Positions 21,195 through 47,050 of a stretch of 64,000 nucleotides of DNA are shown in pieces. The notes under the pieces were generated by a model. The model worked only from the letters and a program-made list of their open reading frames with translations, did no database searches and was not told where the DNA came from. Position 1 is the first letter of the stretch; every line of letters begins with the position of its first letter. The DNA is taken from NCBI GenBank assembly GCA_038087875.1, contig CM075982.1, positions 14,508,001 through 14,572,000 on the forward strand. Direction: 5' to 3'. This DNA comes from Malacoraja senta (taxonomy: Eukaryota). The position numbers were made by a program, and so were the translations under genes.

Positions 21195-21705
21195 AGCGGC
21201 TTTATTCAAGGTCTGCAGTCTGCAGTTTGATGGCATCCTGCGATTTGGTGGGCGGCGCTGGATCAAAAACACCGCTGAGTCGAAGCTCCAACCGGCGCGG
21301 CCTGAAGTCCACGGGCATCGCAGTCTCCGGGGAAGGAGCGGCCGCACCAGACACTTCAAGGCCGCTGAGGACTTTTCCACCCGATGGCGGTGTTCCAGCT
21401 TCCCGGCGGGTGGGCCTATAATCATCGGGCTGTTGCGGCGACTGGCTGCAGTGGCCTCAAACTGGCCCCGACCTCGGGTAGACTAGGAGGAGGAGGAGGA
21501 CTGGACACTTTAGTGCCTTCCCTCACAGTGGAGAGTGTAGATTCTGCTGTGGGGGGATGTTCGTGTTGAATCTCTTACAGTGTGTTGTGTCATTTTTTTT
21601 CTACCTCTTTTTATTATTTATATGGATAATTTTCTCTGTAAAGCACTTTGGCTTCTTTGATTGAAATTGATTGAAAAGTGCTATATAAATAAATTTACTT
21701 TACTT
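21195..21705 (+). mobile_element. GC-rich non-autonomous retroelement with hairpin core and L2-type tail
   Basis: CpG-rich body, hairpin 21518-21557, tail TGTAAAGCACTTTG..GAAAAGTGCTATATAAATAAA(TTTAC)n. Confidence 0.7.
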
Positions 21706-21976
21706 TCCTTTAATGGTTTAATATCTTATCCACAGGTTAGCACCTCTGACATAGCTGCATTTCCTCAGTATTGTAATGTTGATGTGGGTTAAGCTTTGAG
21801 ATTCTGGGGTGGGACTTAAAGATATAATGAGTGCTTTGCAGCAAAAATAGCCAAATTAATTACTTCTACATCATTATCCAAATTAACATTTCAACATTTT
21901 CCCCATTTCATGAACGTTCCTTCATTTCACATTATAAACTGAAATAAGTAGTGTTGATTTCAGATTTTCCTTCTGA

Positions 21977-22867
21977 AGGGCCTGTCCCACTTTCACGACT
22001 TAATTCTTTCATCCCGACCATTTTTTTACTCGTGGACATTTTTTATTGGGCTGGAAAAAACGTCCCGACTTACCTGATGCCACGAGTACCTATGGCTAGC
22101 ATAACGAGCCGCTACGATATATCTACGAACTCCTACGACCTCCTACGGACTCGTTACGAACATTCTGCGAGTTTGAATCAGGGGAACATGGGAGAATTCG
22201 TGAATTACCTCGTGAATTATTACACTAATGCAATTATCAAGAAAGCACATCAGTGTCTCTACTTCCTGAGAAGATTACGGAGAGTCAGTTTGTCAAGGAG
22301 GACTCTCTCTAACTTCTGCAGGTGCACAGTAGAGAGCATGCTGACCGGTTACATCGTGGCTTGGTTCGGCTACTTGAGCGCCCTGGAGAGGAAAAGACTA
22401 CAAAGAGTAGTAAACACTGCCCAGTCCATCATCGGCTCTGACCTTCCTTCCATCGAGGGGATTTATCGCAGTCGCTGCCTCAAAAAGGTGGGAAGTATCA
22501 TCAAGGACCCACACCATCCTGGCCACACACTCATCTCCCTGCTACCTTCAGGTAGAAGGTACAGGAGCCTGAAGACTGCAACAACCAGGTTCAGGAATAG
22601 ATACTTCCCCACAGCCATCAGGCTATTAAACCTGGCTCGGACAAAACTCTGATCATTAATAACCCATTATCTATTATTTGCACTTTATCCGTTTATTTAT
22701 TCATGTGTGTATATATTTATATAATGGTATATGGACACACTGATCTGTTTTGTAGTAAATGCCTACTATGTTCTGTGTGCTGAAGCAAAGCAAGAATTTC
22801 ATTGTCCTATCAGGGACACATGACAATAAACTCACCTGAACTTGAACTTGAAAGTGGGACAGGCGCT
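21977..22867. mobile_element. PIF/Harbinger-like MITE carrying a nested Rex1 fragment
   Basis: 17-bp TIRs AGGGCCTGTCCCACTTT (21977-21993) and AAAGTGGGACAGGCGCT (22851-22867, one mismatch); flanks TGA and TAA. Confidence 0.75.
22217..22852 (+). mobile_element. 5'-truncated Rex1/Babar LINE
   Basis: IIKKAHQCLYFLRRLRR..CTVESMLT..IIKDPHHPGH..LPSGRRYRS..FPTAIRLLN; (CTTGAA)n tail. Confidence 0.9.
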
Positions 22868-23749
22868 TAAGGCAAACTTTTGGATCCACCTCCTCTCCTC
22901 TGCTGTTTAACACAAGTGTGTCTCCCTCCCCACATCTCCATATTCTATTCAAAGCACAATAACATTTTCACACCATTCACAAGCAAAAACAAATGTTTGA
23001 TGATGTTTTCAGTTTATGTTACAGAAATAAACCGAACACCAAACTTCTGGAGCACTAAATGTATCAAGCAGCATCTGTGTGTGTGAGAAGAATTGTCGAC
23101 GTTTCAGGTTGAGACCCTGCATTAGGACTTGAGTGTTCAATTGCAAAATATTAAAGAGTTCACCCTCACATCTTCATCATCTTTTTTGCGTTCATTTCAA
23201 GCATACATTTTGAATCTGTTTTTCAATTCTTATTTCAAATTCCAATAATCACTTTTGAATGACTTTTCTTAACTCAGCTTGATGGATCGATCTATTTCTC
23301 CTGTCTATGCCTGTGCAGAGTTATGATTTAAATGACATTTCAATCTGATCTCTAGATATTGAAGATAAACATTGTGATTCCTCCATACAAATACAGCTTC
23401 ATTTTTATTTTTTGAGAAAACTCATTCAGGCATTGAAATCCTATTTTCCAGAGGTAATTATTGTCTTAGTTGACATTGCAGATGGTTTTTCTTCTCAACC
23501 AGTGCTTTTGTCACTGCCATTTCAAATTGAAAGGAGCAGCGATGATTTTATTTTGGTCTGTGTTTCTAAATCATGCTATTATATTTCAATCCGTTTCTTT
23601 TGTCCACACTCCAAGATATACTGTCATCATTTAAATTAGAATATTATTTCAGAATTCAATGTGATCTTTGTATGAAGTACAACACAGTTAACACATGAGT
23701 TTCTAACTTCATCCCATCCCTTACTGGGATGTGGATATTGGCAGTGATA

Positions 23750-24048
23750 AAGTCATAAGTGATAGGAGTAGAATTAGGCCATTTGGCCCACCAAGTGTAC
23801 TCCACCATTCAATCATGGCTGATCTCTCTCTCTCTCCTAATCCCATTCTCCTGCCTTCTCCCCATAACCTTTGACATCTGTACTAATCAAGAATCTATCT
23901 ATCTCTGCCTTAAAAATATCCACTAATGACCTCCACTGCCTTCTGTGGCAAAGAATTCCACAGATTCACCACCGACTAAAGAAAATCCTTTAATTCTGAG
24001 GCTAGGACCTCTAGTCCTAGACTCTCCCATTACTGGAAACATCCTCGT
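23750..24048 (-). mobile_element. CR1 3' end
   Basis: Reverse complement of the family at 41488-41838. Confidence 0.85.
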
Positions 24049-24869
24049 CAAAATACTGCAGAGGTTGGAAGTCTGAAATTTATTTTTAATAACTGGAAAC
24101 ACTCATCAGGTTAGACAGCATCTGTGGAAAGAAAAACAGAGTTAACATTTAACGAATCAATGTTAAAATCCACAATAACAGAAAATGCTGAAACACTCTG
24201 CAGGTCAGGGGTATCTGTGGAAAAAGAAAACTTGCATCACAAAGCCCCTTCATCAAATCAGTCTTCAATCCCATAACATTCACTGTGTTTCTCTTTCTAC
24301 ATTTCTGTTATTCACCTTTCTCAGTGTAATTTTTGCCATTGGCATGAACTTGATTAATCAGAAATATTGCACTTGGGTAATGGCACGCCAGACCAAGAAG
24401 ATTGAATACATGATCTTTCTCTTATTTTCCATTCAGGTTCAGGGCAACATTTGCAAAGACATTTGTCACCAGTCTCAAAAAATCATGCGTCATGATTAAA
24501 AAAATGGCGAAGAGTGTTTTATTGTCATAGGACAATATTGTCATATTGTCAAAATGGAACAATGAAAATTCTTACTAAAAAAGAGAAAACGCTGGAAATA
24601 CTCAGCAATTCAGCAATGCCTGTGGGAATAGAAACAGAAGCGGGGATGAGACAGAAGAAGCTTGTTACTCTGCAGGGTGTGGTGTTTCCCATAGGATAAA
24701 ACTGGGATTGATGAAGGAGCATAGACATAAGAATGGAGGAGTTATAAACTGCTGAGCAGGATGACATTTCGGGTCGAGACCCTTCTTCAGATGACATAAC
24801 TGGCAAACCTAGCCGGTCACGAGAAAAGATCTGCGCCAATTTTCATCAGAGGGTTTTTTGATTTTCATT

Positions 24870-25720
24870 AACATGGTGAGTCATGAAGCGGCCCATTCAA
24901 AACACTGCAATCAGTGTGGTGTGGGTATTCCCATCATGTTCTTAAGTGGGGAGTACAGTATTTAGACCCTGCGTTGATTAAGGAATGGCAGTAATACTTC
25001 AAGTACATGTAACATATATTGAGATAGAAGGGATTGGGCAGATGATGGTGTCCTTGAACATTGAGGTCATGGAGTTGGCTGATGTGGTTGAAGAAACCTC
25101 AGTGCATCAGCAACTTGCTTCAGCGCCATTATTAGATGGTACAATACACAGCCCTGTAGTGCCATGGGAGGAGGAGAGCATGTTTGAGATGGTGGTCGAG
25201 GGTGCCTTGCTTTCACCTGGATGGTGCTGGGCTTCTAGATTGTTGTTGGAGCTGCACACACCCAGGCTAGTGGACAGGTATTCTAGAAACAAAGAACTGC
25301 AGATGCTGGTTAATGCACGAAAGGACACAAAGTGCTGACGTAACTCAGAGCATCTCTGGTGAACATGGATCGGTAATGTATCAGACCCAAAATGTCACCT
25401 GTCTACGTTCTCCAGAGATGCTCTGAGTTAGTCTAGCACTTGGTGTCCTTTTGTGGAAAGTGTTCTATCCTGCTTGTCGAGTCCAGCAATGGAAATTGAT
25501 TTTTGAGGTGCACTGGGGAGTTCTTGACTAAAGGAATTCCTGCAGCAATGCCAGAAGCTGAGAAACAGTACAACTCCAATGATCCAGCATGCCCAGGGCT
25601 TTGATGCTGTTGAGCTGGTAGTTTTTTTTATTACTATTGGATGTTTCCACCACATCCCATGTGCACTTTTAATTCACCTTATTATAGATATTACAGAATA
25701 TCACCATAAATTTTCCAGTG
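24870..25720 (-). mobile_element. Old CR1-clade LINE remnant containing a fold-back PLE insertion (about 25283-25453)
   Basis: Similar to 12950-13990; inverted PLE arms in the middle. Confidence 0.55.
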
Positions 25721-26054
25721 AACCAGGTAAGCTTAAAGAGGACACAGGAAGCGGGGCCCTGGTGAGTGGAAAGGGAATTCAGCAATTATCACCTTGGGAC
25801 TAAAACAATAAGATTTAGAAACATTCAAATACCAGATTATTGGATTTTTACTCCACAAAGGCAGCAACTCTACCGCTGCGCCACCGTGCTGCTTACCACA
25901 TGTGTTTCCAACGTGGGGTTCCACAGGACCAGTAAGAGCACCAGTAAGATTAGATATAGATAACAAACAGTAATGTTTGCTAAACAATCTCCTATATTCC
26001 CTATCGGGGAGCAAGGTATAGCGTACTACTAAAATAAAAACAGTGGATCCGCCT

Positions 26055-26250
26055 AGTATCTCAGCAACAATTTATTCCTCAACCAATATCACGAAGAATT
26101 GATTATGGGGTCATTAACAATTGCCGCAATGGGAGCTTCCTGGGCACAAAATGGCAGCATTTTTTCCCCTACTACTCATCAAAGCCTCTTCATTTTTAAG
26201 CTCTTTGGTATGTCCTGAGCTTGTGAATTGCACTGGTAAATGCAAGGATT
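26055..26250 (+). mobile_element. Deu-domain SINE remnant
   Basis: CAATTTATTCCTCAACCAATATCAC..GATTATGGGGTCATTA..GGGAGCTT..GCACAAAATGGCAGC..TAAATGCAAG. Confidence 0.65.
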
Positions 26251-28235
26251 TATTTTTGTTAAGAGTTCTACCATGGGGATTCGCGATCTCCAAATGTTCA
26301 TTCCACGTAATTGATTGAAACAACGTTGTTCAGTTCCATCGAAACCTTCTTGTACAAAACCTGTCCTGAAACCTCCTGTTCAGACGGAATACACGGAGAA
26401 AAGTATTTCATCTTAATTTGCTCTGTGCATTAGTTTTCATCATTCCCATACTGTTTATCATGTTGCAAATGAGAGGGAGAATGTGGGAAAGATTTTTCAC
26501 TTTAATGCGATCATGCAGACTGATTTATTCAAAACACACAGGGTCCTGTAAAAGCTCCATCAAATGCAACAGTGGAAGAATTATTAAAGGAACACTTTTA
26601 AATCAGCATGATGTGCAGTTCTGTTTATTGTTCCCTTCAGCCTGTGGTGTGTTGTTAAATGACTAGCACTCTGAGCTGGTTTTCTTCACATAGCCTTGGG
26701 CTATCGTTACAGAACTAAATTCCTTAAATGGTTCTGTGCTCTCCCCCAATGAGATTAAACAGTTAACTTCAAACAATCTCAAAAAAATATACAGCAGGTC
26801 ATGGTCAGTGTGTAACATCCACAAAATACAATGCAGCATCTTTACAGGGCTTCTTCAACAGCACCTCCAAACCCAGGCCCTCAGCATTGTCAAAGACAAA
26901 GGCACTGAAGCACCACTGACTGCAACCTCGTCATCTCTGTTCCACAGGCAACAAGCTTAGTTTCTCCAAGACGGAATGCACATGACGGGTTGCGATGCGC
27001 AAGTCCCCAGAGAATGGGGGAGAAGCATATCCAACATCGCTCTTGTCCTGATAGCCAGCTTTGTGAGTGGCTGCATCAAGCTGTGTGCAGAACAGAAATA
27101 GACGAACACCAGCATCTCTTTGTGCTGAGGTTGTATCTGTCCTGGTGTGTCGAAAGATGGGCCTGGCTCGTTACCCCACAATGTTTCAAACAGTTAGACA
27201 TCGTGGCACTTTATGGAAATGTTCTTTCAGTAAAAACAGTCCATCAGAGAGTGGAACTTCCTGCAGACCATGAGGGAAAAGATAACGATGGATCCAGAAG
27301 GGTGGTGGTTCGCTGAATTATTTGGCAGAATGGCTGATCACCAGGACTCGCCAACAAGCACCAGGTGCTTGCCAAACAGTGGGGTAAAAGAGGACTCATT
27401 GATCTATGAGCTGTGTCCAGGACCCACTGAGACGGACATCAAATGCTGTTGGGAGATCATTAACTTATGAAAGGTGCAATTTTGTCTGCTCAAAACGTTT
27501 TGTTATTCTGATATATTGAGATGTACGTAAAGGAGTAGCATATTCCATGCTGCAGGAGTACAAGCGGAGGGTTGCTCTGAAGCTCAGCGCTACCAACATA
27601 AAGATATTGTGGGGAAGGACTGCAATCTCAGGCCCTTCTGCCACTTGATATGGAGGGCTGTGTCAAAGCCTCTCAAACACTGGACCTTCATTCTCACCCA
27701 GGTGACCACATGACCAGCAATGGGTCTCTGTAGACAGAATGTACAAACATTCCCACTGTGGAGAACCAATAACACTGTGAATGGATAATCTGAATAACAC
27801 TATCTGTGTGTAATGAAACCCATGCACTGCTTTTGTTATATTTCCTGTATATATTTTTATGAACAAAGTTAATATTTAAAATAATAAAATAAATCTCTCC
27901 TCACAGCTGCAACATTCCAGCCCTGGCAACATCCTCATAAATCTCTTCAGTACTCTCTCCATTTCAACTTTATCTTTCCTGTAATGTGGCAATATAGCAC
28001 TTAAACTGTGTCGCATGGAGTGTATACACAACATAACACATACTATGCTCTATACAGCTCCAGCATAACCCTTTTCTCATATTCCTGTATGTCTATTTTA
28101 CCACCTTATTGACCTTTTACGGATCTGTTGACATAGATGACAGAGATCTTTAAAAGTAGGCCAATATCTTCCACTTATTGGACATTTCCTTGCCTTGTAG
28201 CACTTTCCCAAATGCATCCCCACGTCCTTTGCTTT

Positions 28236-28486
28236 GGTTTAGTTTAGTTTAGAGATACAGCGTGGAAACAAGTCCATGCCAACCAGCGATCGCCGCACAC
28301 TTGCACTATCCTACACACACTAGGGACGATTTCCAATTTTTACCAAGCCAATTAACCTACAAACCTGTGCATCTTTGGAGTCTGGGAGGAAACCGGAGAT
28401 CCAGGAGAAAACACACACAGGTCATGGGGAGAACATACAAACTCCGTACAGACAGTACCCATAGTCAGGATCAAACCCGGGTCTCA
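28236..28486 (-). mobile_element. tRNA-headed SINE interrupted by Rex1
   Basis: (CTAAA)n tail, V-domain, B box; most of the head is missing at the Rex1 junction. Confidence 0.85.
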
Positions 28487-29050
28487 GATTCAAGATTCAA
28501 GATTCAAGAGAGTTTATTGTCATGTGTCCCTGATAGGACAATGAAATTCTTGCTTTGTTTCAGCACAACAGAACATAGTAGGCATGACTACGGAACAGAT
28601 CAGTGTGTCCATGTACCATTATATAAATATATACACACATGAATAAATAAACTGATAACGTGCAAATAAACAGATAATGGGCTATTAATGTTCAGAGTTT
28701 TGTCCGAGCCAAGTTTAATAGCCTGATGGCTGTGGGGAAGTAGCTATTCCTGAACCTGGTCGTTGCAGTCTTCAGGCTCCTGTACCTTCTACCTGAAGGT
28801 AGCGGGGAGATGAGTGTGTGGCCAGGATGGTGTGGGTCCTTGATGATACTGCCAGCCTTTTTGAGGCAGCGACTGTGGTAGATCCCCTCGATGGAAGGGA
28901 GGTCAGAGCCGATGATGGACTGGGCAGTGTTTACTACTTTTTGCAGTCTTTTCCGCTCCAGGGCGCACAAGTTGCCGAAACACGCCACGATGCAACCGGT
29001 CAGCATGCTCTCTACTGTGCACCTGTAGAACATAGAGAGAGTCCTCCTTG
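28487..29050 (-). mobile_element. 5'-truncated Rex1/Babar LINE
   Basis: ORF 28692-29084 C-terminus nearly identical to the 22217-22852 copy; (TCTTGAA)n tail. Confidence 0.9.
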
Positions 29051-30620
29051 CCGCCCCTTCTCCAGAGTAAATTCCATTTGCCATAATAACATGTCACACA
29101 GCATTTGATTTCTATTTGCTATTTTCCCATCAACCAGACCATCCATATCTTCCTGTAGCCTACAGTCTTTCTCCTGAATTCACTTAATTCTGCATCATAA
29201 TTTCCTGCCTCCCAAACCAAACTACACTTTTAGGTTTTCAGTTAACAGGAAATTAACTTAAGTTGGCCTACTTTCATGTTAGATTTCAGGACAAGATGAA
29301 TTCTCCAATTAGTCGTGAAACAGAAATCAAATCCTTTCAGCTTTTCTTATTTGCCAATTTGTTCGTGGTTTTTGTTAATTGCAGGAGGACAGGATGTCTC
29401 TTGGTGTTTAATGAATACTGGAAAAGGGAGCAATTTGGAAGGGCAAAGCTGGTTTTAATTGGACTGGTAGGAGAACACTTCAAACCTCAGGATCACAGAA
29501 CAGAAATCGTCATTGGTGCAACCTCAGGGAGGGTAATACTCTGAAATAATCAGACCCAAGAGCTCAACCCAACTAAAGAAGTGTAACAGATGTAAACCAG
29601 CATATTACTGTCGTGGTCATTTATAGAATCACAGCTCGAGAGACCTCAGGGCTTTGCATGCAGAATGGCTACATTTCTTATTGTATAGACCAGTTATAGA
29701 AATCACCAATTTGGTAACTTGAAATAAAAGATGTGCTTCAATAAAACCTATCACAACCATAGAATGTTGGAGTCATAGTCAAACAGTGTGGAAACAGGCC
29801 CAACTTACCTAATCCAAACAACATGTCCCATCTGCACTAGTCCCACTTGCCTGCGTTTGGCCCAGATCCCTCAAAACCTGTCCTATCCATGTACCTGTCT
29901 AATTGTTCCTTAAATGTGTTCCAAAGCATTTTACAGCCAGTGAAGTTGTTGCTTTAATATGTCAAATACAGATTGTGGAAGCAACTCCACCGGCAGGAAC
30001 ATGAACCTGAGAATGAACAGAAAATCTGACCTTCAGTGATGATGACTGCAGAATGCTAGTTAAGGATTAAATGTTGGCTGGAAAAAAAACGGTGTTTTGT
30101 TTGGGACCATCTGAGAGGGATAACTCCTCTCAGAATGGATAGATTTTGGCTTTGCTTTGGCATGATTTAAATAGTTAAAATGGGTGTCATTCCCTTCATG
30201 TGAATATAAGATGAGGGTCAGAGATGTCCTGCAGAAACAAAGGTAAAAAAGGAATTCTACTTAAGCTGCGTGTTTAAAATGATAACAAGTGCAGTGTGTT
30301 TGTAGACCAAAAATGTAATTCTCAAGACAACCGGGCTATTATAAACAAGGATACCAACAGTTGGGAGCCATTATCTTGTTGTTAATTGTTAACAGTTTGA
30401 TTGCTCGCCAGCCTCAAGCAACTAGTTGGAATATTAAAGGAATAAACATAATCTTGTTACATTAACCTCATCATTCTATCTACCACATCAGCTACCTTAT
30501 CAAATGTAAAGGGCAATAGTACTCTATTGCAATAAGATGCAATTTGTCCCAACATTTTGTACCACCACCCATCATCCTTCCCTCAGTTACCATACAAAAT
30601 AACAGATCAGCATGTTATTA

Positions 30621-30655
30621 AGTCTGAAGAAGGGTTTCGGCCCGAAACGTTGCCT
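30621..30655 (+). ncRNA. Minimal type I hammerhead ribozyme-like motif in a PLE end
   Basis: CUGAAGA-A-[GGGU UUCG GCCC]-GAAA-CGUU; palindromic AACGUU in place of helix III; PLE end sequence continues to about 30695. Confidence 0.6.
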
Positions 30656-30794: not shown

Positions 30795-31092
30795 TGCCCG
30801 GTGCACAGCGGTAGAGTTGCTGCCTCACAGCGCCAGAGAGCCAGGTTCAATCCTGGCTACGAGTGCTGTCAATACAGACTGTACATTCTCCTCGTGACTT
30901 GTGTGGGTTTTCTCCGGGATCTCCAGTTTCCTCCCACACATACAGATGTGTAAGTTAATTGGCTTGGTATAATTGATAAATTGTCCCTAGTGCGTGTAGG
31001 ATAGTGTTATTGTACAGGGATCGCTGATGGGAACTGACTTGTTGGGCTGAAGGGCCTGTTTCTCATCACTGTATCTCTAAACTAAACTAAAA
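30795..31092 (+). mobile_element. tRNA-headed SINE (HE1/V-SINE-like)
   Basis: A and B boxes, V-domain, CR1-like tail, (CTAAA)n. Confidence 0.9.
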
Positions 31093-31789
31093 AAGGTATC
31101 ACATTATTTTAAAAAAGGTGGGATGCATTGATAACGATTAACGTCCAGAGTGTTTGTGGAAGAAAAGACAATTCAAGCATTAGTCATTTAAAAACAAAGC
31201 AAAAAGCCCATGTGTTAAAGAAGGAACTGCAGATGCTGGAAAATCGAAGGTACACAAAAATGCTGGAGAAACTCAGCGGGTGCCCATGTACCTGACTCAC
31301 TTCCCAGGCAACGTTCTGCTTGAGCTGTGATTGGAAATGTTTGCACAAATATGCATTAGTTGTTCTGCTCTTCAATCTCAAGGACTGTGGCGCACTACAT
31401 TATTAAATTAAACTAATCAATACTGACATTTCAAACGATACAATAGCCAGGATTGCTCGACTGTGCCAGTGATTTGGTTCTAATTATAATTCACTGTAAA
31501 TGCTTCGGAAGAAAATATTCGGTCTCGCTCTCCTTTACTGAGTGCATCTGAGAAAATCAAATCATACAAAAAAATAGCAATTTGCCTCAGCAATCGTTTG
31601 GTACAACAACAACAACAACCAGGGATGGGCTTTGAGATGGGGGGGGGGGTCATTTAAACAAAGGAAATAATTTCATTAACGTGCCACCATTCACAATCTC
31701 AGGAACTTGCAGAGCACATGACAGCTTCTCTGAAATAGTGTCGTTGTTGGAATAAGGGGAGGCAGTACGGTTCCACAAAAAGCAAGATG

Positions 31790-32205: not shown

Positions 32206-32922
32206 ATAATCATAATCATACTTTATCAGCCAATTATGTTTTGCAACATGCGAGGAATTTGATTTGCCTTACAGTCATACAAATAAAAAGCAACAAAATA
32301 CACACAAAATACAATTGAACATAAACATCCACCACAGTGACTCCTCCACATTCCTCACTGTAATGGAAGGCGAAAAAAAAGTTCAATCTCTTCTGTTCTC
32401 CCACAGTCGGGGGTCAGGCGCTCCGCGTCGGGGCGATCAAGTTCTCACATCGGGGGATCTCAGCTCCCCGCACCGGGCGATCGGACCCCGGGTCGTGGCT
32501 AGTTGAACCTCTTGCGACTTTGGAGCTTCCTGACATCAGTCTCTACCCAAGACTGCGAGCTCCCCGATGTTGAAATTCGCAGGTCGCAGTTGGAGCGTCC
32601 ATCCCAGGCAAGGGATCGCAGGCTCCGATGGTAAGTCCACGGCCCTGTGGTGGGGCTCAAAGTCAGTCTCGAGCAAGGCCGCCAGCTCCATGATGTTAGG
32701 CCGCAGAGCGACCGGAGATACGATCCGGAAAACAACCACATCTCCGGCAAGGTAAAAGATTGAAAAAAAAGTTTCCCCCGACTCCCGCCCCCCCCCCCCC
32801 CACCACATAAAACAAACTAGAGATCATTAACACATACTTTTTAAAACACACAAAAAATAACAGAAAGAGACGAAAAGGCAGACAGACTGTCGGCGAGGCT
32901 GCCATCGCTGACGGCGCCACCT
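32206..32922 (-). mobile_element. GC-rich non-autonomous retroelement, apparently full length, Rex1-type tail
   Basis: 5' AGGTGGCGCCGTCAGCGATGGC, G-run+GGGGGAAAC, hairpin 32328-32367, tail AATTCCTCGCATGTTGCAAAACAT..ATAAAG(TATGAT)n. Confidence 0.75.
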
Positions 32923-36950: not shown

Positions 36951-36973
36951 ATCTGATGTAATAACATTGTAGC

Positions 36974-37041
36974 GGGGCTCATGTTGTTGACCTCCCCGTG
37001 GTGAGCCCTGTCAACTGACTTCAGTCAGGCGAACTACAACA
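36974..37041 (+). ncRNA. HDV/CPEB3-like self-cleaving ribozyme (predicted)
   Basis: P1 GGGGCUC/GAGCCCU, P2 UGUUGUUG/CUACAACA, P3 ACC/GGU, L3 UCCCCGU, P4 CUGAC/GUCAG, J4/2 GCGAA with candidate catalytic C37030. Confidence 0.85.
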
Positions 37042-37707: not shown

Positions 37708-37979
37708 GTAAATGTTATTAAATTCAAACACGAACCAGTCTTGAAGAAGAATGTGTTTACAAGTAAACCTCTCTGCGGTAATCAAACACTATTGTCTCTT
37801 CAGAACAGCTTCACCGCAGGAGGCTGCTTGCTTTGAAAATGGATAAGCAATGGCTTCTATTGTAACTTGCACAAGGATGCTGTATTGAACAAAGTAACAC
37901 TAATTGATACTTCAAGCGCATCGAAACCAGCATGTGAGAACGGGACATCCAGTGGGGCATCCTGATTCAGTTTCATTGT

Positions 37980-38146
37980 CGACACAAAATCCTGGAGTAA
38001 GTCAGCGGGTCAGGCAGCATCTCTGGAGAGAAGGAATGGGTGACCTTTTGGGTCGAGACCCTTCTTCAGACCCGACCTAAAACGTCACCGATTCCTTCTC
38101 TGAGTTACTCCAGCATTTTGTGTCCATCTGCAGTTCCTTCATACAT
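37980..38146. mobile_element. Fold-back PLE terminal insertion
   Basis: Reverse arm to 38070 including the hammerhead core, then forward arm. Confidence 0.8.
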
Positions 38147-38209
38147 CAGGGACAGTGACATATTTCCAAGTAGGGATGTGTGCTTGTAGGGATGATATAC
38201 ATCTACATC

Positions 38210-38892
38210 AGGGTGGTGGGGGGAAGGGGGAAACTGCTTTTCGAGTCCCTCCGAGGAGCGCCTTCGACCTGTCCTTGCGGCCTACCAGCGGGTCCTGGAG
38301 CGACGTTTCCCTGAGGGGACCTGGCCAGAACATCGGCTTTGGCGGCGGTGCAGCGCTGGAGCGCTGTCGTGGAGCGGGCGATGCCTTTCCTGGGTCGCCG
38401 CGCTGGAACTCCAGTATGCTGGGACCGCCGATGAGAACATCGTGGAGCAGCGGTTCTGTGGAGCGGCCCAGCTGCGACGCTGAACGGTACATCCCGGAGC
38501 CTGGGATATCTTGCTGAGATCGCCAGTGTGTGGAGCTCCGTCCGGCGCGGTCTGTTGGCTTGGAAGATGCGGTCTTCGGTGGGAAGGTGGTCGTTCCTGG
38601 TACCCCAAGCCGCTGGGGGTTCTCCCGACGCTGGAGCACCATCACCCGGCGAGAACATCGGGCGCCGTGGCGGCGACTGTGGAGGCCTCAGTGGGCCCGA
38701 CTCTGGGTGGACAAGAGGATGGGGACTGGACTTTGTGCCTTCCCCCACAGTGGGAACCACTGTGGGGGGATGTTTTGGTGTTGAACTTCTTTTTAATACT
38801 ATGTTGTATTTTATTAGTGTGCTGCAAGGACATCTGAATTTCCCCTGAATAAGGGGATTAATAAAGTCTAATTCAATTCAATTCAATTCAAT
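38210..38892 (+). mobile_element. GC-rich non-autonomous retroelement with hairpin core
   Basis: G-run+GGGGGAAAC at the start, hairpin 38740-38770, tail AATTTCCCCTGAATAAGGGGATTAATAAAG then (AATTC)n. Confidence 0.75.
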
Positions 38893-40559
38893 CAGTTTTA
38901 TTGTAACTAGTTTAGAGAAGACGATAAATAACTATTCATGTTAATTGGCCCTCATCAACACCATTCATTGTAATACATTGGGGGTATGGTTACTATATCA
39001 TCCCTACAAGCACACATCCCTACTTGGAAATATGTCACTGTTCCTTCATGTTCACAGGGTCTATATCCAGGAAGTCCCCACTAAGCACATTGTGGAAGTA
39101 TCTTCACCAGAAAGACTGCCTCAGTTCAGGAAGGGCTCATCACCTCAAGAGCAGTTAGTGATGGGCAACAAATGCTGGCTTTCCCGGAAATACCCAGATC
39201 CCATAGGATGAGTAAATATTAAAAAATAACCCATTAGCATCATCTTTATTGCAGAATACCAACTAATATTAAGAGGAATTGATTATTTAAAATTAATATT
39301 ATTGATTTTATGCAGTAAATCACAAAAGGATTGGTTTAAGATGGAAGTAAATAGATCACATACACCTAATGAGGTATCGCTGTTTCTCCGGATGTTTGAC
39401 AGTGGAAGACTAATGTTACAAAGAAGAAGCATAGATCCAAAACATTGGAAACTAACTGTTAACCAAACTGAAGTCTAATCATAATCACTATTGGAATACA
39501 TAAAGGCTTGATTCATAACTAAATCGTTCACACTGATGTCATAATTAACTCCAGTGGCTTCAAGTCGACAGTTTCATCACCCCGTCAACCTAACAGTCAG
39601 AATAGTTATCAATTCAAGGAAGCTGCAGATTCCATTACTGGGAAATTCAATCGCAGAGAACAACACCTCCATGATCGTGCCTGGGATACAGGGCCATTGA
39701 CTCCAGGAAATGCTCAGCCAAAGGCCCAATGAGTGATGGAGAAAGACAAGTAAATGTTGTTGGACTTTTGGCTGAATGTTTAAGGACATTTATTATTTAT
39801 CGATGCAACATTGCTTTCAAGTGAATGGCCTTTTGTATTTCAGCAATAAACTAAACGATATCAACAATAATGTACAGTACGTGCTGCACAGTTCTATAAC
39901 TCTACAACTAATTGCCGAGGAATAGAAGGTTACAGACCAAACGTGAGTGAATGGGGTTTGTATAGATAGGTGCATGGACACAGTGGGCTGAAGGGCCAGG
40001 TTCTGTGCTAGATGTTTCTATGAATGCAGCCAATCCTGTCTGGAGGTTAGGGAATGCAGGTGAGACTGATCCTTCTGGATGGTTACTGCTGTGTGTGGTC
40101 ACACACCAACATCTTCTGGCAAGGGAGGGATGTGGATCGGGGTTCTTGTGCTATCTGGGTGCTGCAGTTGTTGTGGTTGCACAACTCGCAATATGTCAGG
40201 ACTGCATTGTTGTGATAGAGAGAGGGTGCCGCAGTGGGCATACACTCAAATGGGGATTGCTGGGGTTTGGGGTGCATCAAAATGGCATTGTCTAAGTCTA
40301 CTATTGCACCTGGTGGGAGTTCGAGTTGTGCATCGATTCACCAACTTTCTCATCATCTGTCTTCCACCTGCCTTGCAACAAAGGAAGGAAATGTGTCTGG
40401 AAATTATTGACGTTCTTGCAGATTGCATCTCAAGACCTGGCTCTTGGATTTGTCTACTGCTCCCACTGCCTTTTAGCATGTGTCTGACCCCTGTAACACA
40501 CTGAACCTCTCCTGTGCTCATCCTCTTTCTCTACTAACATTCCAGAATAGTTCTGCAAC

Positions 40560-40728
40560 TGTGTAGGAAAGATCTGCAGATGCTGGTTTAAATAGAAGGT
40601 GGACACAAAATGCTGGAGTAACTTAGCGGGACAGGCAACATCTCTGAAGAGAAGGAATGGGTGAGATTTCAGGTCAAGACCCTTCTTCAGTCTGATGCTG
40701 CCTGTACCCCTGAGTTACTCCAGCATTT
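40560..40728. mobile_element. Fold-back PLE terminal insertion
   Basis: Reverse PLE end 40560-40692 plus forward GATGCTGCCTG..TTACTCCAGCATTT. Confidence 0.8.
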
Positions 40729-40999
40729 CTCGATGCCAAAATTGGACACTTCCCACAGGACACTCAACACTTGCTCAAAGCCCAGTGCACATTTCCTCAA
40801 GGGTTCACCAAAAGACATGATGCCTCAAACCATTGTGACCTCCAAGCACTCACACCTGAGCCTTCCACACACACTGCTTCCCTGTGACCACCGGAACAGA
40901 AATACTCTCTCAAGCTCTCCAGATGGATTAATTTGCATTGCTAGTGTAATAGTCTTTTTGTTCCAGCCGTAATATCATTTAAACTAATGAACGAAGGTC

Positions 41000-41327
41000 A
41001 CAGAGTCATGGAATATACAGCACAGAAAGGTGCCCTTCGACCCACCATGTCTGCACAGAGCGTGTTGCACCCATTTCCATTACTCCTAACTCATTTTATC
41101 GCCTATCCCCACACCCTCAGATTGTACTATTCACTCAGGGCAGGTTACCTGGGAACAAATACCTTACCAACTAACCTCTTTTGGGAGGAAACCGCAACAT
41201 GTGGGGAAACCCACACGGTCAGAAGGAAAGCATGCAAATTCCACACAAACAGCACTGCCGGTCAGGATTGAACCCAGCACCCTGGTGTTGTGCGGCAGCA
41301 CCTCCACTAGCTGTGCCACTGTGCTAT
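41000..41327 (-). mobile_element. Older tRNA-headed SINE
   Basis: Minus strand GCACAGTGGCACAGCTAGTGGAG..GGTTCAATCCTGACC head and CR1-like tail. Confidence 0.75.
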
Positions 41328-41487
41328 CCTGAAATTATTCAAAGAAAGTAAACAAAACACAACTTTGTTTAATGCCTCCCTGATCCAGTTGGTGACAGTA
41401 TCGGAGTGAGTGACCACTTACAGTCCTTGGACATATTTTCAGCACAAATGTGAGACAGATCCCTCTTCAGCCTGCTGGCTGGTGACC

Positions 41488-41838
41488 TTGGATAGAGTAG
41501 ATGTGGAGAGGATGTTTCCACTAATGCGAGAGTCCAGGACTAGATGTCTTAGCCCAAGAATTAAAGGATGTTCTTTCAGGAAGAAGCTGAGGAGAAATGT
41601 CTTTAGTCAGAGGGTGGTGAATCTGTGGAATTCTTTGCCACAGAAGGCTGTGGAGGCCGTCAGTGGATATTTTTAAGGCAGAGGTAGATAGATTCTTGAT
41701 TAGTACAGGTGTTAGAGGTTATGGGGAGAAGGCAGGAGAATGGGGTTAGGAGGGAGAGATAGATCTGTCATGATTGAATGGCGGAGTAGACTTGATGGGC
41801 CAAATGGCCTAATTCTACTCCTATTCCTTATGACCTCT
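41488..41838 (+). mobile_element. CR1 3' end
   Basis: LDRVDVERMFPL..FSQRVVNLWNSLP; GGGCCAAATGGCCTAATTCT terminus. Confidence 0.9.
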
Positions 41839-42834
41839 AATCGAGTCCCTGGGCAGCATCGTTGCCCGAGTCAGGCCTTCATCCTGGCAACCTCACCATG
41901 GCAGATTTTGAAATAAATTAGCATTCTCATAATACTGTAAATCCCGGAGACACATGCCGGTGATATTAATGGATGGGAAGGAACAGGTTATTTAATCTAA
42001 TCATTGCCCATCACCCTCCCACCAACTGTTAACAACGGAGACAGGGAGACTGACACATGGACGCGGTAAGCAGTTGTTTAATAAATATCAGCATCAGCCA
42101 CTTCAAGGTTCAAGTGTCAGAGCTGAGTCACAGGAATGGAAATTGAAAGTAGCCTGTGGCCGATTAATAAAAAGATAGTGCTTGAGCAGTTTGTCTAAAC
42201 TATTTGTTGCCACTGACGAGTGTTATATGGTCTCTCAAACTGATTAAATTATGGAAATGAGACACAATGAATAATAAAAGTCTATTCTATTATCTGCGTT
42301 GTACTTTGTGGTGAATATAATTATTCGGTCCACACTATCAAGGCCTTTCACCTTCAGAAACACTTTAAGCAAAATAATTTCACATTTGAGACCTTTTTTA
42401 AAGAGTCTGATGGTGAGAAATAAAACAAGGCACACAATGGGCATGGGCAGAGAGACCTTTCTAAACATGTTGTACATGTTTGTATTGTGCAAACATAAGA
42501 GGAAATCTAACACATACACTGACCTCAGATATGAAAGTGGTTTAAATGATCCAACAGCCCTTTGCAATCACATCTCTGCAGTATGATTACTTATCAGCTA
42601 CTTTTATTATGATAATGACAGCCAATTTGAAAATAAGTCTTTCAAAATGTTTCATTACATTTATGGAAATTTAGTATTTTAATAACTGCAGGACAGACTG
42701 TAACAATCTGTAATTCGTGGCACCTCATTAGACACCGTCACCATAGCAATCTGTAACATTGACATGGTGTTTTAATGATGTGGAATATGTTTCTTCCTCC
42801 TTTTTGTGGAAAGCAGAGGTTTATTATTCTGCTG

Positions 42835-43040
42835 GTAGACACAAAATGCTGGAGTAACTCAGCGGGACAGGCAGCATCTCTGGAGAGAAGGAATGTTTCG
42901 GGTCGAGACCCTTCTTCAGCCTGCTACCTTCGATTTAAACCAGCATTTGCAGTTCTTTCCTACACATTTTGTCTGCTCCACTGCAAAATCTCCTCAAGGT
43001 ATGTCTACTTTAAAGAAGTTCTCCTCCTCTCTCCGACGAG
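42835..43040. mobile_element. PLE insertion (inverted plus forward end with 3' extension)
   Basis: Perfect 17-bp TSD GGTTTATTATTCTGCTG at 42818-42834 and 43041-43057. Confidence 0.85.
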
Positions 43041-43725
43041 GGTTTATTATTCTGCTGATGGTTTGATTTTGATTTCAGCATCGCTCTCAGTAACTGGATC
43101 TTGCTTCCACAGTCCTAAATCCAGGCTGCTCCCTTATAGAAAGGAGACTTGAACGAGTTAGATACAGATTTGCTGGATATTCCCATCACACATTAATGCC
43201 TGGAGGGAGCGGAGATTAAAAATGAGGACGATATTGAGAATTTAATTTTAACAAAGATCCATATGGGACTTCTCAACACTATGTCTGTCGTTCATAATAA
43301 AAATATTCTTTAGTCTGGAACAAAAACTATAACATTAAGAACCTCAAGGCATTCCAAAGCAATTTTCAACCTATGAAGCAGTTACTATTATAATGTGGAA
43401 AATGCAATTCCAAATACACTCAGGATCCCAGAGACAGGAATGTGACAATCTGGTTTGTTTAACATTGACCAAGAAACGAGTGAACATCCTTACTGTTTCT
43501 CAGATACTCACGTTAAACAAAGATTGCAGTTTAACAACTTTTTTTTCATTTCTGAAGAGCCATAGAGTGACTGGTGCTGTAAATGTAATTAGTCTTTATT
43601 CAACACAACCATATAGGAAAGAGAACTCAACGTCCATCTATATCTTTGTCCTACGCTTTAATAATAACCGATGATTGAATACAATTTCAATAGTCCTGAT
43701 GCATAGTTTATTGCAATATTTAGTG

Positions 43726-44170
43726 CTGCTCCCGGGTGAGAGACCGCTCCCGCAACGCAACTTCTCCAGCCCGAGTCGCGGGGTTGGAACGACCCGGAGC
43801 GGGGCCGTACATCGCCCGGCGCGGCTTTAATGGCCGCGGGACATTCCAGCGCCCGCCGGGGGCTCCAACTTTGTGACGTTTGAGCCCGGAGCGAGGTCGT
43901 ACATCGCCCGGCGCGGCCTCAACGGCCGTGGGACTTAACATTGCCCGCCTGGGGCTTCAACATCGGGAGAAAAATGGTGCAGGGGAGAGAAAAGTCTTTG
44001 CCTTCCATCACAGTGAGGAGGAGATTCACTGTGATGGATGTTTTCTGTAAATTGAATTGTTTGTGTTTCGTGTAGGAATTGCTTTGTTTGTATGGCTGTA
44101 GAAACGGAGTTTCGTTTGAGCCTCTCTGAGGTTCAAATGACAAGTAATAAAATCTAATCTAATCTAATCT
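43726..44170 (+). mobile_element. GC-rich non-autonomous retroelement, 5'-truncated
   Basis: 11-bp TSD AATATTTAGTG (43715-43725 and 44171-44181); internal ~90-bp duplication; hairpin 44004-44038; (AATCT)n tail. Confidence 0.85.
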
Positions 44171-45399
44171 AATATTTAGTGAACAAATGGTTCCAAGGAA
44201 TTATTTATTTCCAAGGGAGCACATCTTAAGCAACAAGTGTTAAGAAAGGCCAGCTCGCATTAATATTCCGAAAGCTGTAGAGGATGAAACCCAGGAATCA
44301 TTTTCCACAGTGTTGTGAAGGATGACTTTGGATACACAAACATCCAAAGTACTGATTGAGAGAGCAGATATAACTAAAGACACATTTGTTATGCTAAATG
44401 GCAAAATAACTTCCTTGATATTATTCTGAGATTTAAGACAGACCCCCCTTTGTCTAGACATTTGATTCATAGCATCATAGTCACCCAGTGCCGAAACAGA
44501 CCCTTCAGTCTTTCAACTGTGGAACAAGTGTAAATAGTAATTCAGCACCAAAACAGGCCCTTCGGTCCAACTTGCCTATGCTGTCCAAGAAGCCCCATCT
44601 ACAGTAGTCCCGCCTGCCCTTGTTTGGCCCATATCCCTCTAAACCTTTCCTATACATGTACCTACCATGTGCCTTTATAAACGTTGTTATTATACTTGCC
44701 TCAACTACTTCTTCTGGCAGCTCGTTCCATTTACCAAGTCTGTGTGAAAAAGCTGCCTCAGGATCCTATTAAATCTTTCCTCTCTCACCTTAAACCTCTG
44801 GTTCTTGATTTCTCTTACATGAACATAGATATAAAGACTTTCTACAGATGTTTAAAAAAAACATTAACCAAGTGAAGATTGGTCCTTTAGAAAGTGAGTC
44901 CAGGTAAATGATAATGGAAAACAAAAGGACAGTAGATGATTAAATAAGTATTTTGCATTTGTCTTCAACACAGAGGGTACAGTAACATCCCAGAAACAGC
45001 TGTAAATCAGGAAGTGGAAACGAGGGAGCATCACAGAGAAATTACAATCACCAGTGAAAAGCCGCTGAGCTGCAGTCTGATTAGTCTCTGGGTTCTGACG
45101 GAGTGAACCTGCCTGAATCTGAGCCTCCCTCTGCTCTTCACTCATAGCTTGTCCCCTCCATCAAATCATAAAAGTGGGGCAGACGCCAACAACTTGGAAT
45201 AGTGCAGATTTAGATCAGTTTACGGTCAGATACACCAGGGTGGAATGAAATTCATTTTTCATACGAACCTCATCGAGTAAACAGTGTAGCTAAAACAATG
45301 ATAAATACGACAGCAAATACAACACGTGTAAAACAGCAGAATGGAGCAAGATTGCACTCCAAAACCATTGCACAATGTGTGGTTGAGAGTGGGGGTTTG

Positions 45400-47050
45400 G
45401 AGGAAGAGCAATTACAGTCTCATAGGGATCCCTGCTGTTAGGAAATCATCAGATTCAGACCCACATGCTGTCTTGTCTCCCAGGTGGCAGGATACAGAAC
45501 GCCACTGAGAAGGGACGAGATGTTCTGTGAAGGAGAACATGTTGATGAACTACATCAGAGGGAGGGCTTAGCTGTACAAATAGGGGTCCTATAATCAGAC
45601 AGTCGGCTGCTATGAAAGTAGTTTAAAAAGTGGTGCATTGAAGGATATTAGCTATATGGAGATTGGACAAACTTGAATTGTTTTCTCTGGAATGTTTGAG
45701 GTTGAGGAAGTATGCATCGGTTGCATGTTCCAACAAGAAAGAAAATGGACATATCGGTTGGGTTATGTATGGTTAACAGCATAGTTTGGGAGAGAGGGCT
45801 TCAGATGTTTGTAAAGGAGGAAGAAGTTGAAGACGGATGTGTTGCACTTCAATGTAACTGGTTCATTAGCAGGGTTGGGAAGAGTTTAAATTGAATTGGC
45901 GATTGGATCAAACTAGTGCATAGTAATTTAGATAGATTTAGATTTAGATATTTATTTGTTGTCATTTGAACCTAAGTTCAAACGAAATTCTGTTTCTGCA
46001 GTCATACAAACAAGTAAAAAGAACCAAGACACAACACAATTTACACAAACATCCATCACAGTGAATCTCCTCCTCACTGTGATGGAAGGCAAAGTCTTAT
46101 CTCTCCCCTGAACTCCACATTCTCCTCCCGATGTCAAAGTCAAAGCCCCCGGCGGGCGATTGTAGATATGTCCCGCGGCCATTAAAGCTGCACCGGGCGA
46201 TGCAAGGCCACGCTCCGGGTCTTGATGTTGTAGCCCCCGGTAGCGCCAGCAAGTCCCAATGCCACCAATGCCTCGCCGGGCGATGCCAGACCCCGCTCCA
46301 GGTCATCCTCAACCCCGCAACTCGGGCGGGGGTAGCTGCCGTTGCGGGAGCCCCGAAAAGCGGTCTCCCACCATGGACCCGCGAGCTCCCGATGTTACCA
46401 TCCACCAGACCTGCGGCTGAAGCCTCCGAATCTCCGGGGTCGGGTAGCTGCAGCGCGCCATCACAGCTCCTCCCGCTCCGAACTCGGCCAGCTCCACGAT
46501 GGTGAGTAGTCCGCAGGCTCCGCGACTGGAGCCCCAGGTCGTTCCAGTTGGAGGCCGCTCCACGGTGCTAGGCCCCAACGACAACGGAGACCCGACAGAG
46601 AAAGGTCGGGTCTCCCGTGCAGGGAAAAGATTTTAAAAGTTTCCCCCACCCCCACCCCCCGCCCCCCGCCCCCCCACACATACCCAGTTTTTAAAAAAAC
46701 ACTATACAAAATTCAAACGAAACAAAAAATATATAGAAAGGAGGAAAAGGTGCGTAAACAAATGGAAATGTTAGATGGGAGTAGGGAAGGCCATAGAACA
46801 ATGCTCATTCAGCAAACTAAGAGAGACTGTGGAAAGTGCAAAAAAGGATTAGAGAGCCCGTATTGAAATGTACAAAGTACAGTTGATGATCTCCAAATAC
46901 AAATAGCATGTGGGATGACAATGTTGAGAGAATTGGAACTTGGTTCAAAAGACAGGTGGGAGTTAATATTCCAGGATATATCCTGTTCAATAAAGTGAAT
47001 TGAAGAGGGAAAAAATTGGATAACAGTGCTAATTAAGGAAGATAACATGG
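45400..47050 (+). mobile_element. Old CR1 5' part: ORF1 esterase-like and ORF2 endonuclease N-terminal remnants
   Basis: CLPGGRIQNATE, W...WEREGFR, K.DVLH.N..G; then VDDLQIQIA and WELNIPGY-like motifs; interrupted by the element at 45928-46745. Confidence 0.55.
45928..46745 (-). mobile_element. GC-rich non-autonomous retroelement (same subfamily as 43726-44170)
   Basis: Identical hairpin 46052-46086, same tail type with (TCTAAA)n, G-run+GGGGGAAAC near the 5' end. Confidence 0.85.

What the first reader, a model, noticed from the sequence alone, without database searches (positions are those of the whole stretch)
21195..46745. Modular GC-rich retroposon family: one covarying hairpin core, four different LINE-type tails
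Seen: five elements (21195+, 32206-, 38210+, 43726+, 45928-) share GCCTTCC-stem-loop-GGATGTT about 120-150 nt from the 3' end. Stems are 13-15 bp with variable loops (3-14 nt). TCCATCACAGTGA/TCACTGTGATGGA becomes TCCCCCACAGTGG/CCACTGTGGGGG (compensatory), and other changes give G-U pairs in the sense strand. Three copies also share a 5' G-run+GGGGGAAAC. The tails differ: one L2-type and three distinct Rex1-type ends. No Pol III A/B boxes were seen; the longest copy begins AGGTGGCGCC, resembling LINE 5' ends. Inference: a non-tRNA SINE-like superfamily with a selected RNA structure that swaps partner LINEs, analogous to CORE, V or Deu domains. I cannot tell whether it is already catalogued.
Basis: partly seen in the sequence, partly recalled or inferred. 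Interest (0 to 1): 0.72.

Follow-up and report, generated by a model that had tools for sequence, protein, structure and literature searches.

The report
Non-coding skate retroposon with conserved hairpin
Five copies of a very abundant, gene-less jumping element of skates share a GC-rich body and one strongly conserved RNA hairpin but end in different LINE-type tails, and two of them are recent insertions absent from the same sites in related species; it is an unusual form of a familiar genomic parasite, not a new class.

Summary
All five elements carry GCCTTCC-hairpin-GGATGTT 118-151 nt from their 3' ends. There are 4 exact pattern hits against 0.04 expected. A covariance model finds only these five in the window.

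The 13-14 bp helix is paired in 68 of 69 cells. Three pairs change on both sides, and all 7 non-Watson-Crick cells are G-U on the sense strand.

New here:
- Contigs of two related species join cleanly across E4 and E5. Both are therefore recent insertions; E4 has an 11-bp target duplication.
- E4 and E5 are only 73% identical, yet their longest perfect run (45 nt) is exactly the hairpin.
- The whole GC-rich bodies are homologous and collinear, not only the hairpin.
- The E4/E5 tails match the 3' ends of two RT-linked Rex1-like LINE fragments in the window.

There is no tRNA or Rfam head and no coding capacity. Internal T-runs and an AATAAA near the 3' end argue against Pol III.

Best reading: an ORF-less, LINE-dependent retroposon family, probably Pol II-transcribed, that exchanges tails. 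It is neither a SINE in the strict sense nor a shown superfamily. Its origin from a LINE (bipartite or internally deleted derivative) stays open.

The scan has met this family many times on other pieces of this genome. Repeat catalogues could not be queried.

The parts
21195..21712 (+). E1: a 5'-truncated copy without the head. Core hairpin at 21515-21561. The last ~100 nt are a different, L2-like tail with a (TTTAC)n end.
   Evidence: Body homologous to E3 (z 14.7). Homology to E3 ends about 50 nt 3' of the hairpin. The L2 label comes from memory and was not tested.
32206..32922 (-). E2: the longest copy (717 nt). G-run plus GGGGGAAAC at 32805-32771, core hairpin at 32371-32324, tail with an (ATGATT)n end.
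   Evidence: Body collinear with E5 (z 29). The 5' boundary was not verified by an empty site.
38210..38893 (+). E3: a copy that begins at the G-run (38211-38234). Core hairpin at 38737-38774 with a 3-nt loop. Rex1-like tail with an (AATTC)n end.
   Evidence: Sequence upstream of the G-run is not alignable to the E2 or E5 heads. Tail against the LINE 3' UTR gives z 2.7.
43726..44170 (+). E4: a 5'-truncated copy (445 nt) and a recent insertion. Core hairpin at 44000-44042. Internal 92-nt tandem unit x1.8 at 43793-43961. Tail with an (AATCT)n end.
   Evidence: Contigs of organisms C and D join 43725 to 44182-44185, so the site is empty there. Also. Tail against the LINE 3' UTR gives z 7.4.
43715..43725 (+). 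5' copy of the 11-bp target-site duplication AATATTTAGTG of E4. The second copy is at 44171-44181.
   Evidence: Read. Consistent with the empty-site joins.
45926..46732 (-). E5: an 807-nt copy and a recent insertion. AT-rich leader at 46732-46676. G-run plus GGGGGAAAC at 46675-46639. Head hairpin at 46615-46586. Core hairpin at 46090-46048. Rex1-like tail at 46010-45926.
   Evidence: Contigs of organisms C and D join 45925 to 46733. The run of organism A has both filled junctions with 0 mismatches. Also.
21951..22856 (+). Comparator, not part of the family: the 3' end of a Rex1-like LINE. It has an RT C-terminal ORF, a ~200-nt 3' UTR and a (TGAACT)n end.
   Evidence: The ORF hits PF09004 and has RT-bearing relatives in skates, a shark and teleosts. 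It shares the GAATTTC-hairpin-ATGACAA architecture with E5.
28486..28800 (-). Comparator: a second 3' end of the same Rex1-like LINE family, with a (TGAATCT)n end.
   Evidence: (z 61 against the first LINE).

Best explanation
These are copies of one very abundant, recently active family of ORF-less, LINE-dependent retroposons of skates, with full length at least 0.7-0.8 kb.

Layout of a copy, 5' to 3':
- an AT-rich leader;
- a G-run ending in GGGGGAAAC;
- a GC-rich body (54-65% G+C) built partly of 80-90-nt tandem units;
- a strongly conserved core hairpin with fixed flanks (GCCTTCC ... GGATGTT);
- a T-rich spacer;
- a terminal module of about 60-100 nt of LINE type: a stem-loop, AATAAA and a 5-7-nt microsatellite.

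Inferred mechanism: the RNA is made by Pol II, or by read-through, not by Pol III. The reverse transcriptase of a CR1-group LINE (Rex1-like for E2-E5, another type for E1) recognises the terminal stem-loop and microsatellite and copies the RNA into the genome by target-primed reverse transcription. This gives 5'-truncated copies and variable target duplications.

The terminal module is exchanged between lineages, so the family can change helpers. The core hairpin stays when tails change. It is therefore most likely a cis element of the parasite RNA itself (stability, ribonucleoprotein formation or access to the LINE protein), not the partner-specific recognition site.

What is shown: structure, conservation, insertion polymorphism, tail likeness and absence of coding capacity. 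What is inferred: the polymerase, the helper and the hairpin's role.
For: Mobility:
- Empty sites for E4 and E5 in two related species, filled junctions in the source-like run, and an 11-bp target duplication for E4.
- Summed contig depth in element bins is about 1e5-1e6, against 20-100 in the unique flanks, in three DNA runs.
- E4 and E1 lack heads, as expected for 5' truncation.

One family: the bodies are collinear and significantly alike.

Constraint on the hairpin:
- 68 of 69 cells are paired, 3 pairs change on both sides, and slid controls reach 37-54%.
- The 7 G-U cells are all on the sense strand.
- E4 and E5 are 73% identical overall, and their longest perfect run (45 nt) is the hairpin (permutation p 5e-5). 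Both are recent insertions, so this divergence arose between source lineages.

LINE dependence:
- GAATTTC-hairpin-ATGACAA occurs 3 times against 0.07 expected: in E5 and in the two LINE 3' ends.
- Local alignment to the LINE 3' UTR gives z 7.4 for E4 and 4.2 for E5.
- All copies end in microsatellites.

Not Pol III and non-coding:
- No tRNA, no Rfam family, no A or B box, and T4-T8 runs in the 5' halves.
- AATAAA lies 24-33 nt from the 3' end in 4 of 5 copies.
- No Pfam family in the sense-strand ORFs.
Against: - Only five copies in two sub-lineages. The double changes at two pairs split the copies the same way and may each be a single event.
- No partner LINE with an identical tail is in the window. 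The E2 and E1 tails show no significant likeness to the LINE 3' UTR present (z 0.8 and 0.6).
- The 5' terminus and the promoter are undefined. The leaders of E2 and E5 do not align significantly.
- No RNA evidence: the RNA-labelled run looked like DNA, and contigs cannot show transcript ends.
- The core hairpin could itself be LINE 3' UTR material. The Rex1-like LINE 3' UTR has a hairpin of its own at about the same distance from the end.
- Dfam and Repbase could not be queried.
Confidence: 0.72

Rival explanations
1. Origin rival, compatible with the mechanism above. The family is a bipartite, internally deleted derivative (SIDE-type) of one Rex1-type LINE: the head is the LINE's 5' UTR, and the last ~190 nt, core hairpin included, are its 3' UTR. 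The hairpin would then be a LINE structure, and the other tails later replacements.
For: - The E4/E5 terminal ~100-135 nt resemble the 3' UTR of the Rex1-like LINE in the window.
- That UTR has a 16-bp hairpin of its own about 110 nt from the end, followed by a similar T-rich stretch.
- ORF-less bipartite LINE derivatives are a known kind and are thought to be Pol II-transcribed (PMC5786205, PMC6740152).
Against: - The stem sequence of the LINE hairpin is unrelated to the core hairpin.
- The 500-600-nt GC-rich body with tandem units matches nothing else in the window.
- No full-length LINE 5' end is available for comparison.
- By 2018 such ORF-less derivatives were reported only for RTE, Ingi, Vingi and R2 (PMC5786205).
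Confidence: 0.3
2. The elements are ordinary 5'-truncated copies of an autonomous LINE with a very long (0.7-0.9 kb) 3' UTR.
For: The tails are of LINE type, truncated copies exist (E1, E4), and the true 5' end of the family is unverified.
Against: - E5 is a complete insertion of 807 nt bounded by empty-site junctions. It has no ORF and begins with an AT-rich leader, not coding sequence.
- Three copies share the same G-run head.
- Contig depth stays high through the head and falls sharply in the bin that holds the AT-rich leader and the flank.
- The LINE 3' UTRs seen here are only about 200 nt.
Confidence: 0.06
3. A true Pol III SINE whose head derives from an unrecognised small RNA.
For: The elements are abundant, non-coding and LINE-tailed like SINEs. 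A block conserved in the heads of E2, E3 and E5 (GCGGCCTA.CA...TGGAGC) loosely recalls an A box.
Against: - No tRNA, 5S, 7SL or snRNA match even at E 5, and no B box.
- T6-T8 runs shortly after or before the head would terminate Pol III.
- The length is 0.7-0.8 kb.
Confidence: 0.05

Closest known systems
SINE superfamilies with a highly conserved central domain (CORE, V, Deu, Ceph, Meta; e.g. PMC4824008, PMC5499810, PMC11481361)
   Same: A conserved internal segment is kept while the 3' tail is exchanged between LINE partners. Both are non-coding and abundant.
   Different: Those have Pol III heads (tRNA or 5S), are 150-500 nt long, and their domain is shared by otherwise unrelated families across distant taxa. 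Here there is no Pol III head, the length is 0.7-0.8 kb, the whole body is homologous, and the family has so far been seen only in skate-like genomes. Likeness to the known domains was not tested.
ORF-less bipartite non-autonomous LINEs and short internally deleted elements (Kojima 2018, PMC5786205; Persaeus/Zenon, PMC6740152)
   Same: No ORF, a LINE 3' end, probable Pol II transcription, and dependence on the parent LINE's protein.
   Different: Homology of the 5' part to a LINE 5' UTR is not shown. The body is a long GC-rich repeat-bearing segment. Several unrelated tails occur in one family.
SVA-type composite retroposons of hominids (from general knowledge)
   Same: A non-coding element with a simple-repeat 5' end, a GC-rich body with variable tandem units, a poly(A) signal near the 3' end, and mobilisation in trans by a LINE.
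   Different: No sequence relation. SVA uses L1 through a poly(A) tail, whereas these elements carry stringent-type stem-loop and microsatellite tails of CR1-group LINEs.
Stringent-type 3'-tail recognition by L2-clade LINEs (UnaL2, ZfL2; PMC4176376)
   Same: A terminal stem-loop plus short repeats is the element recognised by the LINE protein. The tail hairpins here keep their position but not their sequence.
   Different: The conserved core hairpin lies 120-150 nt upstream of the end, outside the exchanged module. Recognition was not tested.

Membership tests
SINE (strict sense, as in SINEBase, PMC3531059) | Internal Pol III promoter from a tRNA, 5S or 7SL-derived head | tested here: not met
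   ARAGORN finds 0 genes. Rfam finds nothing in the elements at gathering score or at E up to 5. No A- or B-box pattern in the heads.
SINE (strict sense, as in SINEBase, PMC3531059) | Short length and a transcript that Pol III can complete (no internal T-run terminators) | tested here: not met
   The copies are 717 and 807 nt. T4-T8 runs occur on the sense strand: E2 has T8 at position 153 and E5 has T6 and T7 near its 5' end.
SINE (strict sense, as in SINEBase, PMC3531059) | Non-coding, with a LINE-derived 3' tail | tested here: met
   No Pfam family in the sense ORFs. The tail architecture is shared with LINE 3' ends.
Conserved-domain SINE superfamily (CORE, V, Deu, Ceph, Meta) | Central domain shared by families with different heads in distant taxa, or identity with a known domain | not testable with these tools
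   No Dfam, Repbase or other vertebrate genomes were on hand. Pattern scans of the metagenome and viral collections found 0. Within the window the whole body is shared, not only the domain.
LINE-mobilised retroposon (target-primed reverse transcription) | Insertion with a precise empty site in relatives, target-site duplication, 5' truncation and a 3' simple-repeat end | tested here: met
   Empty sites for E4 and E5 in two species. An 11-bp duplication for E4 and at most 2 bp for E5. E1 and E4 are truncated. All copies have microsatellite ends.
Bipartite ORF-less non-autonomous LINE / SIDE | 3' part homologous to the 3' end of an autonomous LINE | tested here: inconclusive
   Significant for E4 (z 7.4) and E5 (z 4.2), weak for E3 (z 2.7), and absent for E2 and E1 against the one LINE family in the window.
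Bipartite ORF-less non-autonomous LINE / SIDE | 5' part homologous to the 5' UTR of the same LINE | not testable with these tools
Rex1-type 3' end | Conserved 3' UTR followed by oligonucleotide tandem repeats of variable unit (Volff 2000, as summarised in PMC6274825), on an element whose RT groups with Rex1 | tested here: inconclusive
   The architecture is met. The comparator LINE's ORF has PF09004 and RT-bearing fish relatives. No RT phylogeny was made, so the clade name is provisional.
Structured RNA element under selection | Helix kept by compensatory and G-U changes, specific to one strand, more conserved than its surroundings | tested here: met
   Power is low with five copies.

The most novel reading that the evidence does not exclude
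The core hairpin with its fixed flanks is a partner-independent cis element. It lets a Pol II-made, ORF-less RNA capture the proteins of several different CR1-group LINEs (Rex1-like and L2-like). On this reading, the family is an SVA-like composite retroposon lineage of cartilaginous fish that accounts for part of the 'recently expanded LINE' and high 'Rex1' content reported for skates and rays. It would be undescribed and not derived from any single LINE.
Probability: 0.3. Interest if true: 0.65.

Novelty: new variant of a known kind. Interest (0 to 1): 0.45.

Why it matters
Skate genomes are reported to be dominated by recently expanded LINEs (PMC10115646), and rays to have the highest Rex1 coverage among vertebrates (PMC13343379). 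An ORF-less family with LINE tails at this abundance could make up a good part of that signal while being filed as LINE.

The family also offers a natural experiment on how a parasite of parasites changes helpers. Closely related bodies carry different tails, and a structured segment is kept throughout. ORF-less non-autonomous derivatives were long known from only a few LINE clades (PMC5786205).

The species-specific insertions shown here make the family usable as presence/absence markers in skates.

Tried and rejected
- Fetching more copies through spurious ORFs: the ORF spanning the hairpin has no relatives in the protein collection.
No further copies, no full-length LINEs and no other species' sequences could be read.
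- Pattern scans of the metagenome and viral contig collections for the hairpin: 0 hits.
- The search of earlier findings by sequence: blank.
- Paper searches by topic and by sequence strings found no description of the family.
- Rfam and ARAGORN: nothing in the elements.
- AGGTGGCGCC as a LINE-like 5' end: the only occurrence in the window is E2 itself, about as expected by chance.
- Leaders upstream of the G-run (E2 against E5, and E3 upstream): not significantly alike. The family's 5' terminus therefore stays undefined.
- Apparent 17-nt likeness between E5's verified 5' flank and internal E2 sequence: not significant on its own (96 of 1000 shuffles; 3.5% of random genomic 40-mers). I do not claim microhomology-guided joining.
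- Homology between the LINE 3' UTR hairpin and the core hairpin: only the position is alike, not the sequence.
- Exact partner tails for E1, E2 and E3: none in the window.
- The RNA-labelled run X18 behaved like DNA, and contigs cannot show transcript ends, so nothing can be said on expression.
Full report
**What is there.**
- The pattern GCCTTCC, 25-55 bases, GGATGTT occurs four times exactly against 0.04 expected.
- The fifth copy (E3) has the same flanks around a shorter loop.
- A self-comparison of the window finds no further copies.
- A covariance model built from the five hairpins and run with filters off finds only these five. E-values run from 1e-13 to 1e-20, and the next sense-strand hit has E 0.3.
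- Corrected coordinates: E1 21195-21712 (+), E2 32206-32922 (-), E3 38210-38893 (+), E4 43726-44170 (+), E5 45926-46732 (-).

**The hairpin.**
- Each copy folds on its own into a 13-16 bp helix (-18 to -28 kcal/mol, z -2.7 to -4.3) with loops of 3 to 14 nt.
- On a clean alignment (A2) the 14-pair helix is paired in 98.6% of cells, against 37-54% when the partners are slid.
- Seven pairs never vary, four vary on one side, and three change on both sides.
- RNAalifold recovers the same helix without being told.
- All seven non-Watson-Crick cells are G-U on the sense strand and none on the antisense strand. This points to an RNA of the element's own sense.
- The strongest single argument for constraint is E4 against E5. 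They are 73% identical over 475 columns, yet their longest perfect run, 45 nt, covers exactly the hairpin with its flanks (permutation p 5e-5). Both are recent insertions, so their divergence arose between source lineages, where selection for propagation acts.
- The caveat is sample size. There are five copies in two sub-lineages, and two of the double changes split the copies the same way.

**More than a hairpin is shared.** With the hairpin region removed, the bodies still align collinearly and significantly: E2-E5 z 29, E4-E5 z 36, E1-E3 z 14.7, E3-E5 z 8.7, E2-E3 z 6.2. The multiple alignment shows further invariant blocks.
- The bodies are 54-65% G+C with CpG observed/expected of 0.8-1.1.
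- They hold 80-92-nt tandem units whose number varies.
- Three copies share a G-run ending in GGGGGAAAC. In E5 this is followed by a second hairpin of 11 pairs.
- This is one family with subfamilies, not unrelated elements sharing a module.

**They moved, and recently.** I laid the contigs of four public runs on 43400-47000.
- In organisms C and D, single contigs join 43725 to 44182-44185 and 45925 to 46733. E4 and E5 are therefore absent from otherwise alignable sites whose flanks differ by about 5%.
- The run of organism A holds both filled junctions of E5 with no mismatch.
- E4 is flanked by an 11-bp direct repeat, AATATTTAGTG (43715-43725 and 44171-44181). E5 has at most 2 bp.
- E4 and E1 lack the head, as expected for 5' truncation.
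- In all three DNA runs the summed contig depth over the elements is 1e5 to 1e6, against 20-100 in the unique flanks. It stays high from the tail through the G-run and falls sharply in the next bin, which holds E5's AT-rich leader and the flank. The tool warns that this depth is not a copy number. It does show great abundance in several related species.

**Tails.** The window holds two 3' ends of one RT-linked LINE family (21951-22856 + and 28486-28800 -).
- Their ORF carries PF09004 and has RT-bearing relatives in Leucoraja, Rhinoraja, Scyliorhinus and teleosts.
- Their 3' UTR runs: a GTGCTG...GAATTTC block, a stem-loop, ATGACAATAAA, and a 6-7-nt microsatellite.
- GAATTTC-(8-38)-ATGACAA occurs three times against 0.07 expected: in the two LINEs and in E5.
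- Local alignment of the LINE UTR gives z 7.4 for E4, 4.2 for E5, 2.7 for E3, 0.8 for E2 and 0.6 for E1.
- The tail stem-loops keep their place but not their sequence.
- E1 and E3 are each other's closest relatives in the body, yet lose all likeness about 50 nt 3' of the hairpin. E2 and E5 diverge at the tail stem-loop and the microsatellite.
- At least two tail exchanges therefore happened inside the family.
- No identical partner tail for E1, E2 or E3 is in the window.
- The L2 label of E1's tail and the clade name Rex1 rest on recalled features and on the description of Rex1 3' ends in PMC6274825. No phylogeny was made.

**Not a SINE in the strict sense.**
- No tRNA gene or tRNA-like head, and no Rfam family even at E 5.
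- No A or B box, and T4-T8 runs on the sense strand in the 5' halves that would stop Pol III.
- Lengths of 717 and 807 nt.
- AATAAA lies 24-33 nt before the 3' end in four of five copies, and in the LINEs as well. This fits Pol II transcripts.
- The sense ORFs are short, lie in several frames and match no Pfam family.

**How it most likely works.** Shown: structure, conservation, insertion polymorphism and tail likeness. Inferred: the rest.
- The RNA is probably made by Pol II or by read-through transcription.
- A CR1-group LINE protein recognises the terminal stem-loop and repeat, as established for stringent-type LINEs (PMC4176376), and inserts a copy by target-primed reverse transcription.
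- The core hairpin lies outside the exchanged module and is kept across tail types. I therefore take it for a cis element of the parasite RNA itself, not the partner-specific site.
- Main rival on origin: the last ~190 nt, hairpin included, and the head are the UTRs of one Rex1-type LINE, which would make the family a bipartite or internally deleted derivative (PMC5786205, PMC6740152).
- In favour of that rival, the LINE UTR in the window has a 16-bp hairpin of its own at about the same distance from the end. Against it, that hairpin's sequence is unrelated.

**Known or new.**
- No paper in the searchable library describes the family.
- The skate genome papers speak only of recently expanded LINEs.
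- Dfam and Repbase were not available.
- Earlier notes of this scan report the same family many times on other pieces of this genome. I used them as leads only.
- New in this report: the empty sites, the target duplication, the E4/E5 conservation test, the strand asymmetry of the G-U pairs, the in-window LINE comparison and the Pol III arguments.

**Verdict.** This is a new variant of a known kind, of moderate interest.

Noticed in passing
window 36974-37041 (+): Weak match to an HDV-type ribozyme model: RF02682, 30.3 bits against a gathering score of 44, E 0.046, full model length. It lies where another note of the scan (s1-177972) reports a ribozyme-headed retroposon.
   Followed up: no
window 44489-44851: Another repeat between E4 and E5 is even more abundant than the family studied (summed contig depth up to 2-3 million). 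Many contigs skip about 92-111 nt inside it (44650-44663 to 44756-44764), so a shorter variant is common.
   Followed up: no
window 28250-28490 (-) and 30795-31095 (+): Two copies of a classical-looking SINE with a tRNA-like start (GGTTCAATCCTGG-type B box), a CR1-like terminal stem and a (CTAAA)n end. One abuts the Rex1-like LINE end at 28486. ARAGORN does not call a tRNA there.
   Followed up: no
window 55071-58715 (+): A long LINE fragment with RVT_1 matches in two ORFs. It ends in a GC-rich stem and a (TGGTTATA)n repeat, which is a CR1-like end. It shows no likeness to the family's body or head.
   Followed up: partly
window 22701-22743 (+) and 28600-28640 (-): The 3' UTR of the Rex1-like LINE has a 16-bp hairpin of its own about 110 nt from the end, followed by a T-rich stretch. 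The position is the same as that of the retroposon's core hairpin, but the sequence is unrelated.
   Followed up: partly
window 46733-46750 (-) and 32860-32878 (-): The verified flank just 5' of E5 resembles internal sequence of E2 at the collinear place (16 identities in a 17-column local alignment). On its own this is not significant. It may be chance in T/C-rich sequence or microhomology at the 5' junction.
   Followed up: partly
window 46639-46675 (-), 32771-32805 (-), 38211-38234 (+): The sense-strand G-runs of the heads have four or more G tracts and could form G-quadruplexes in the RNA. Contigs of the public runs tend to break there.
   Followed up: no
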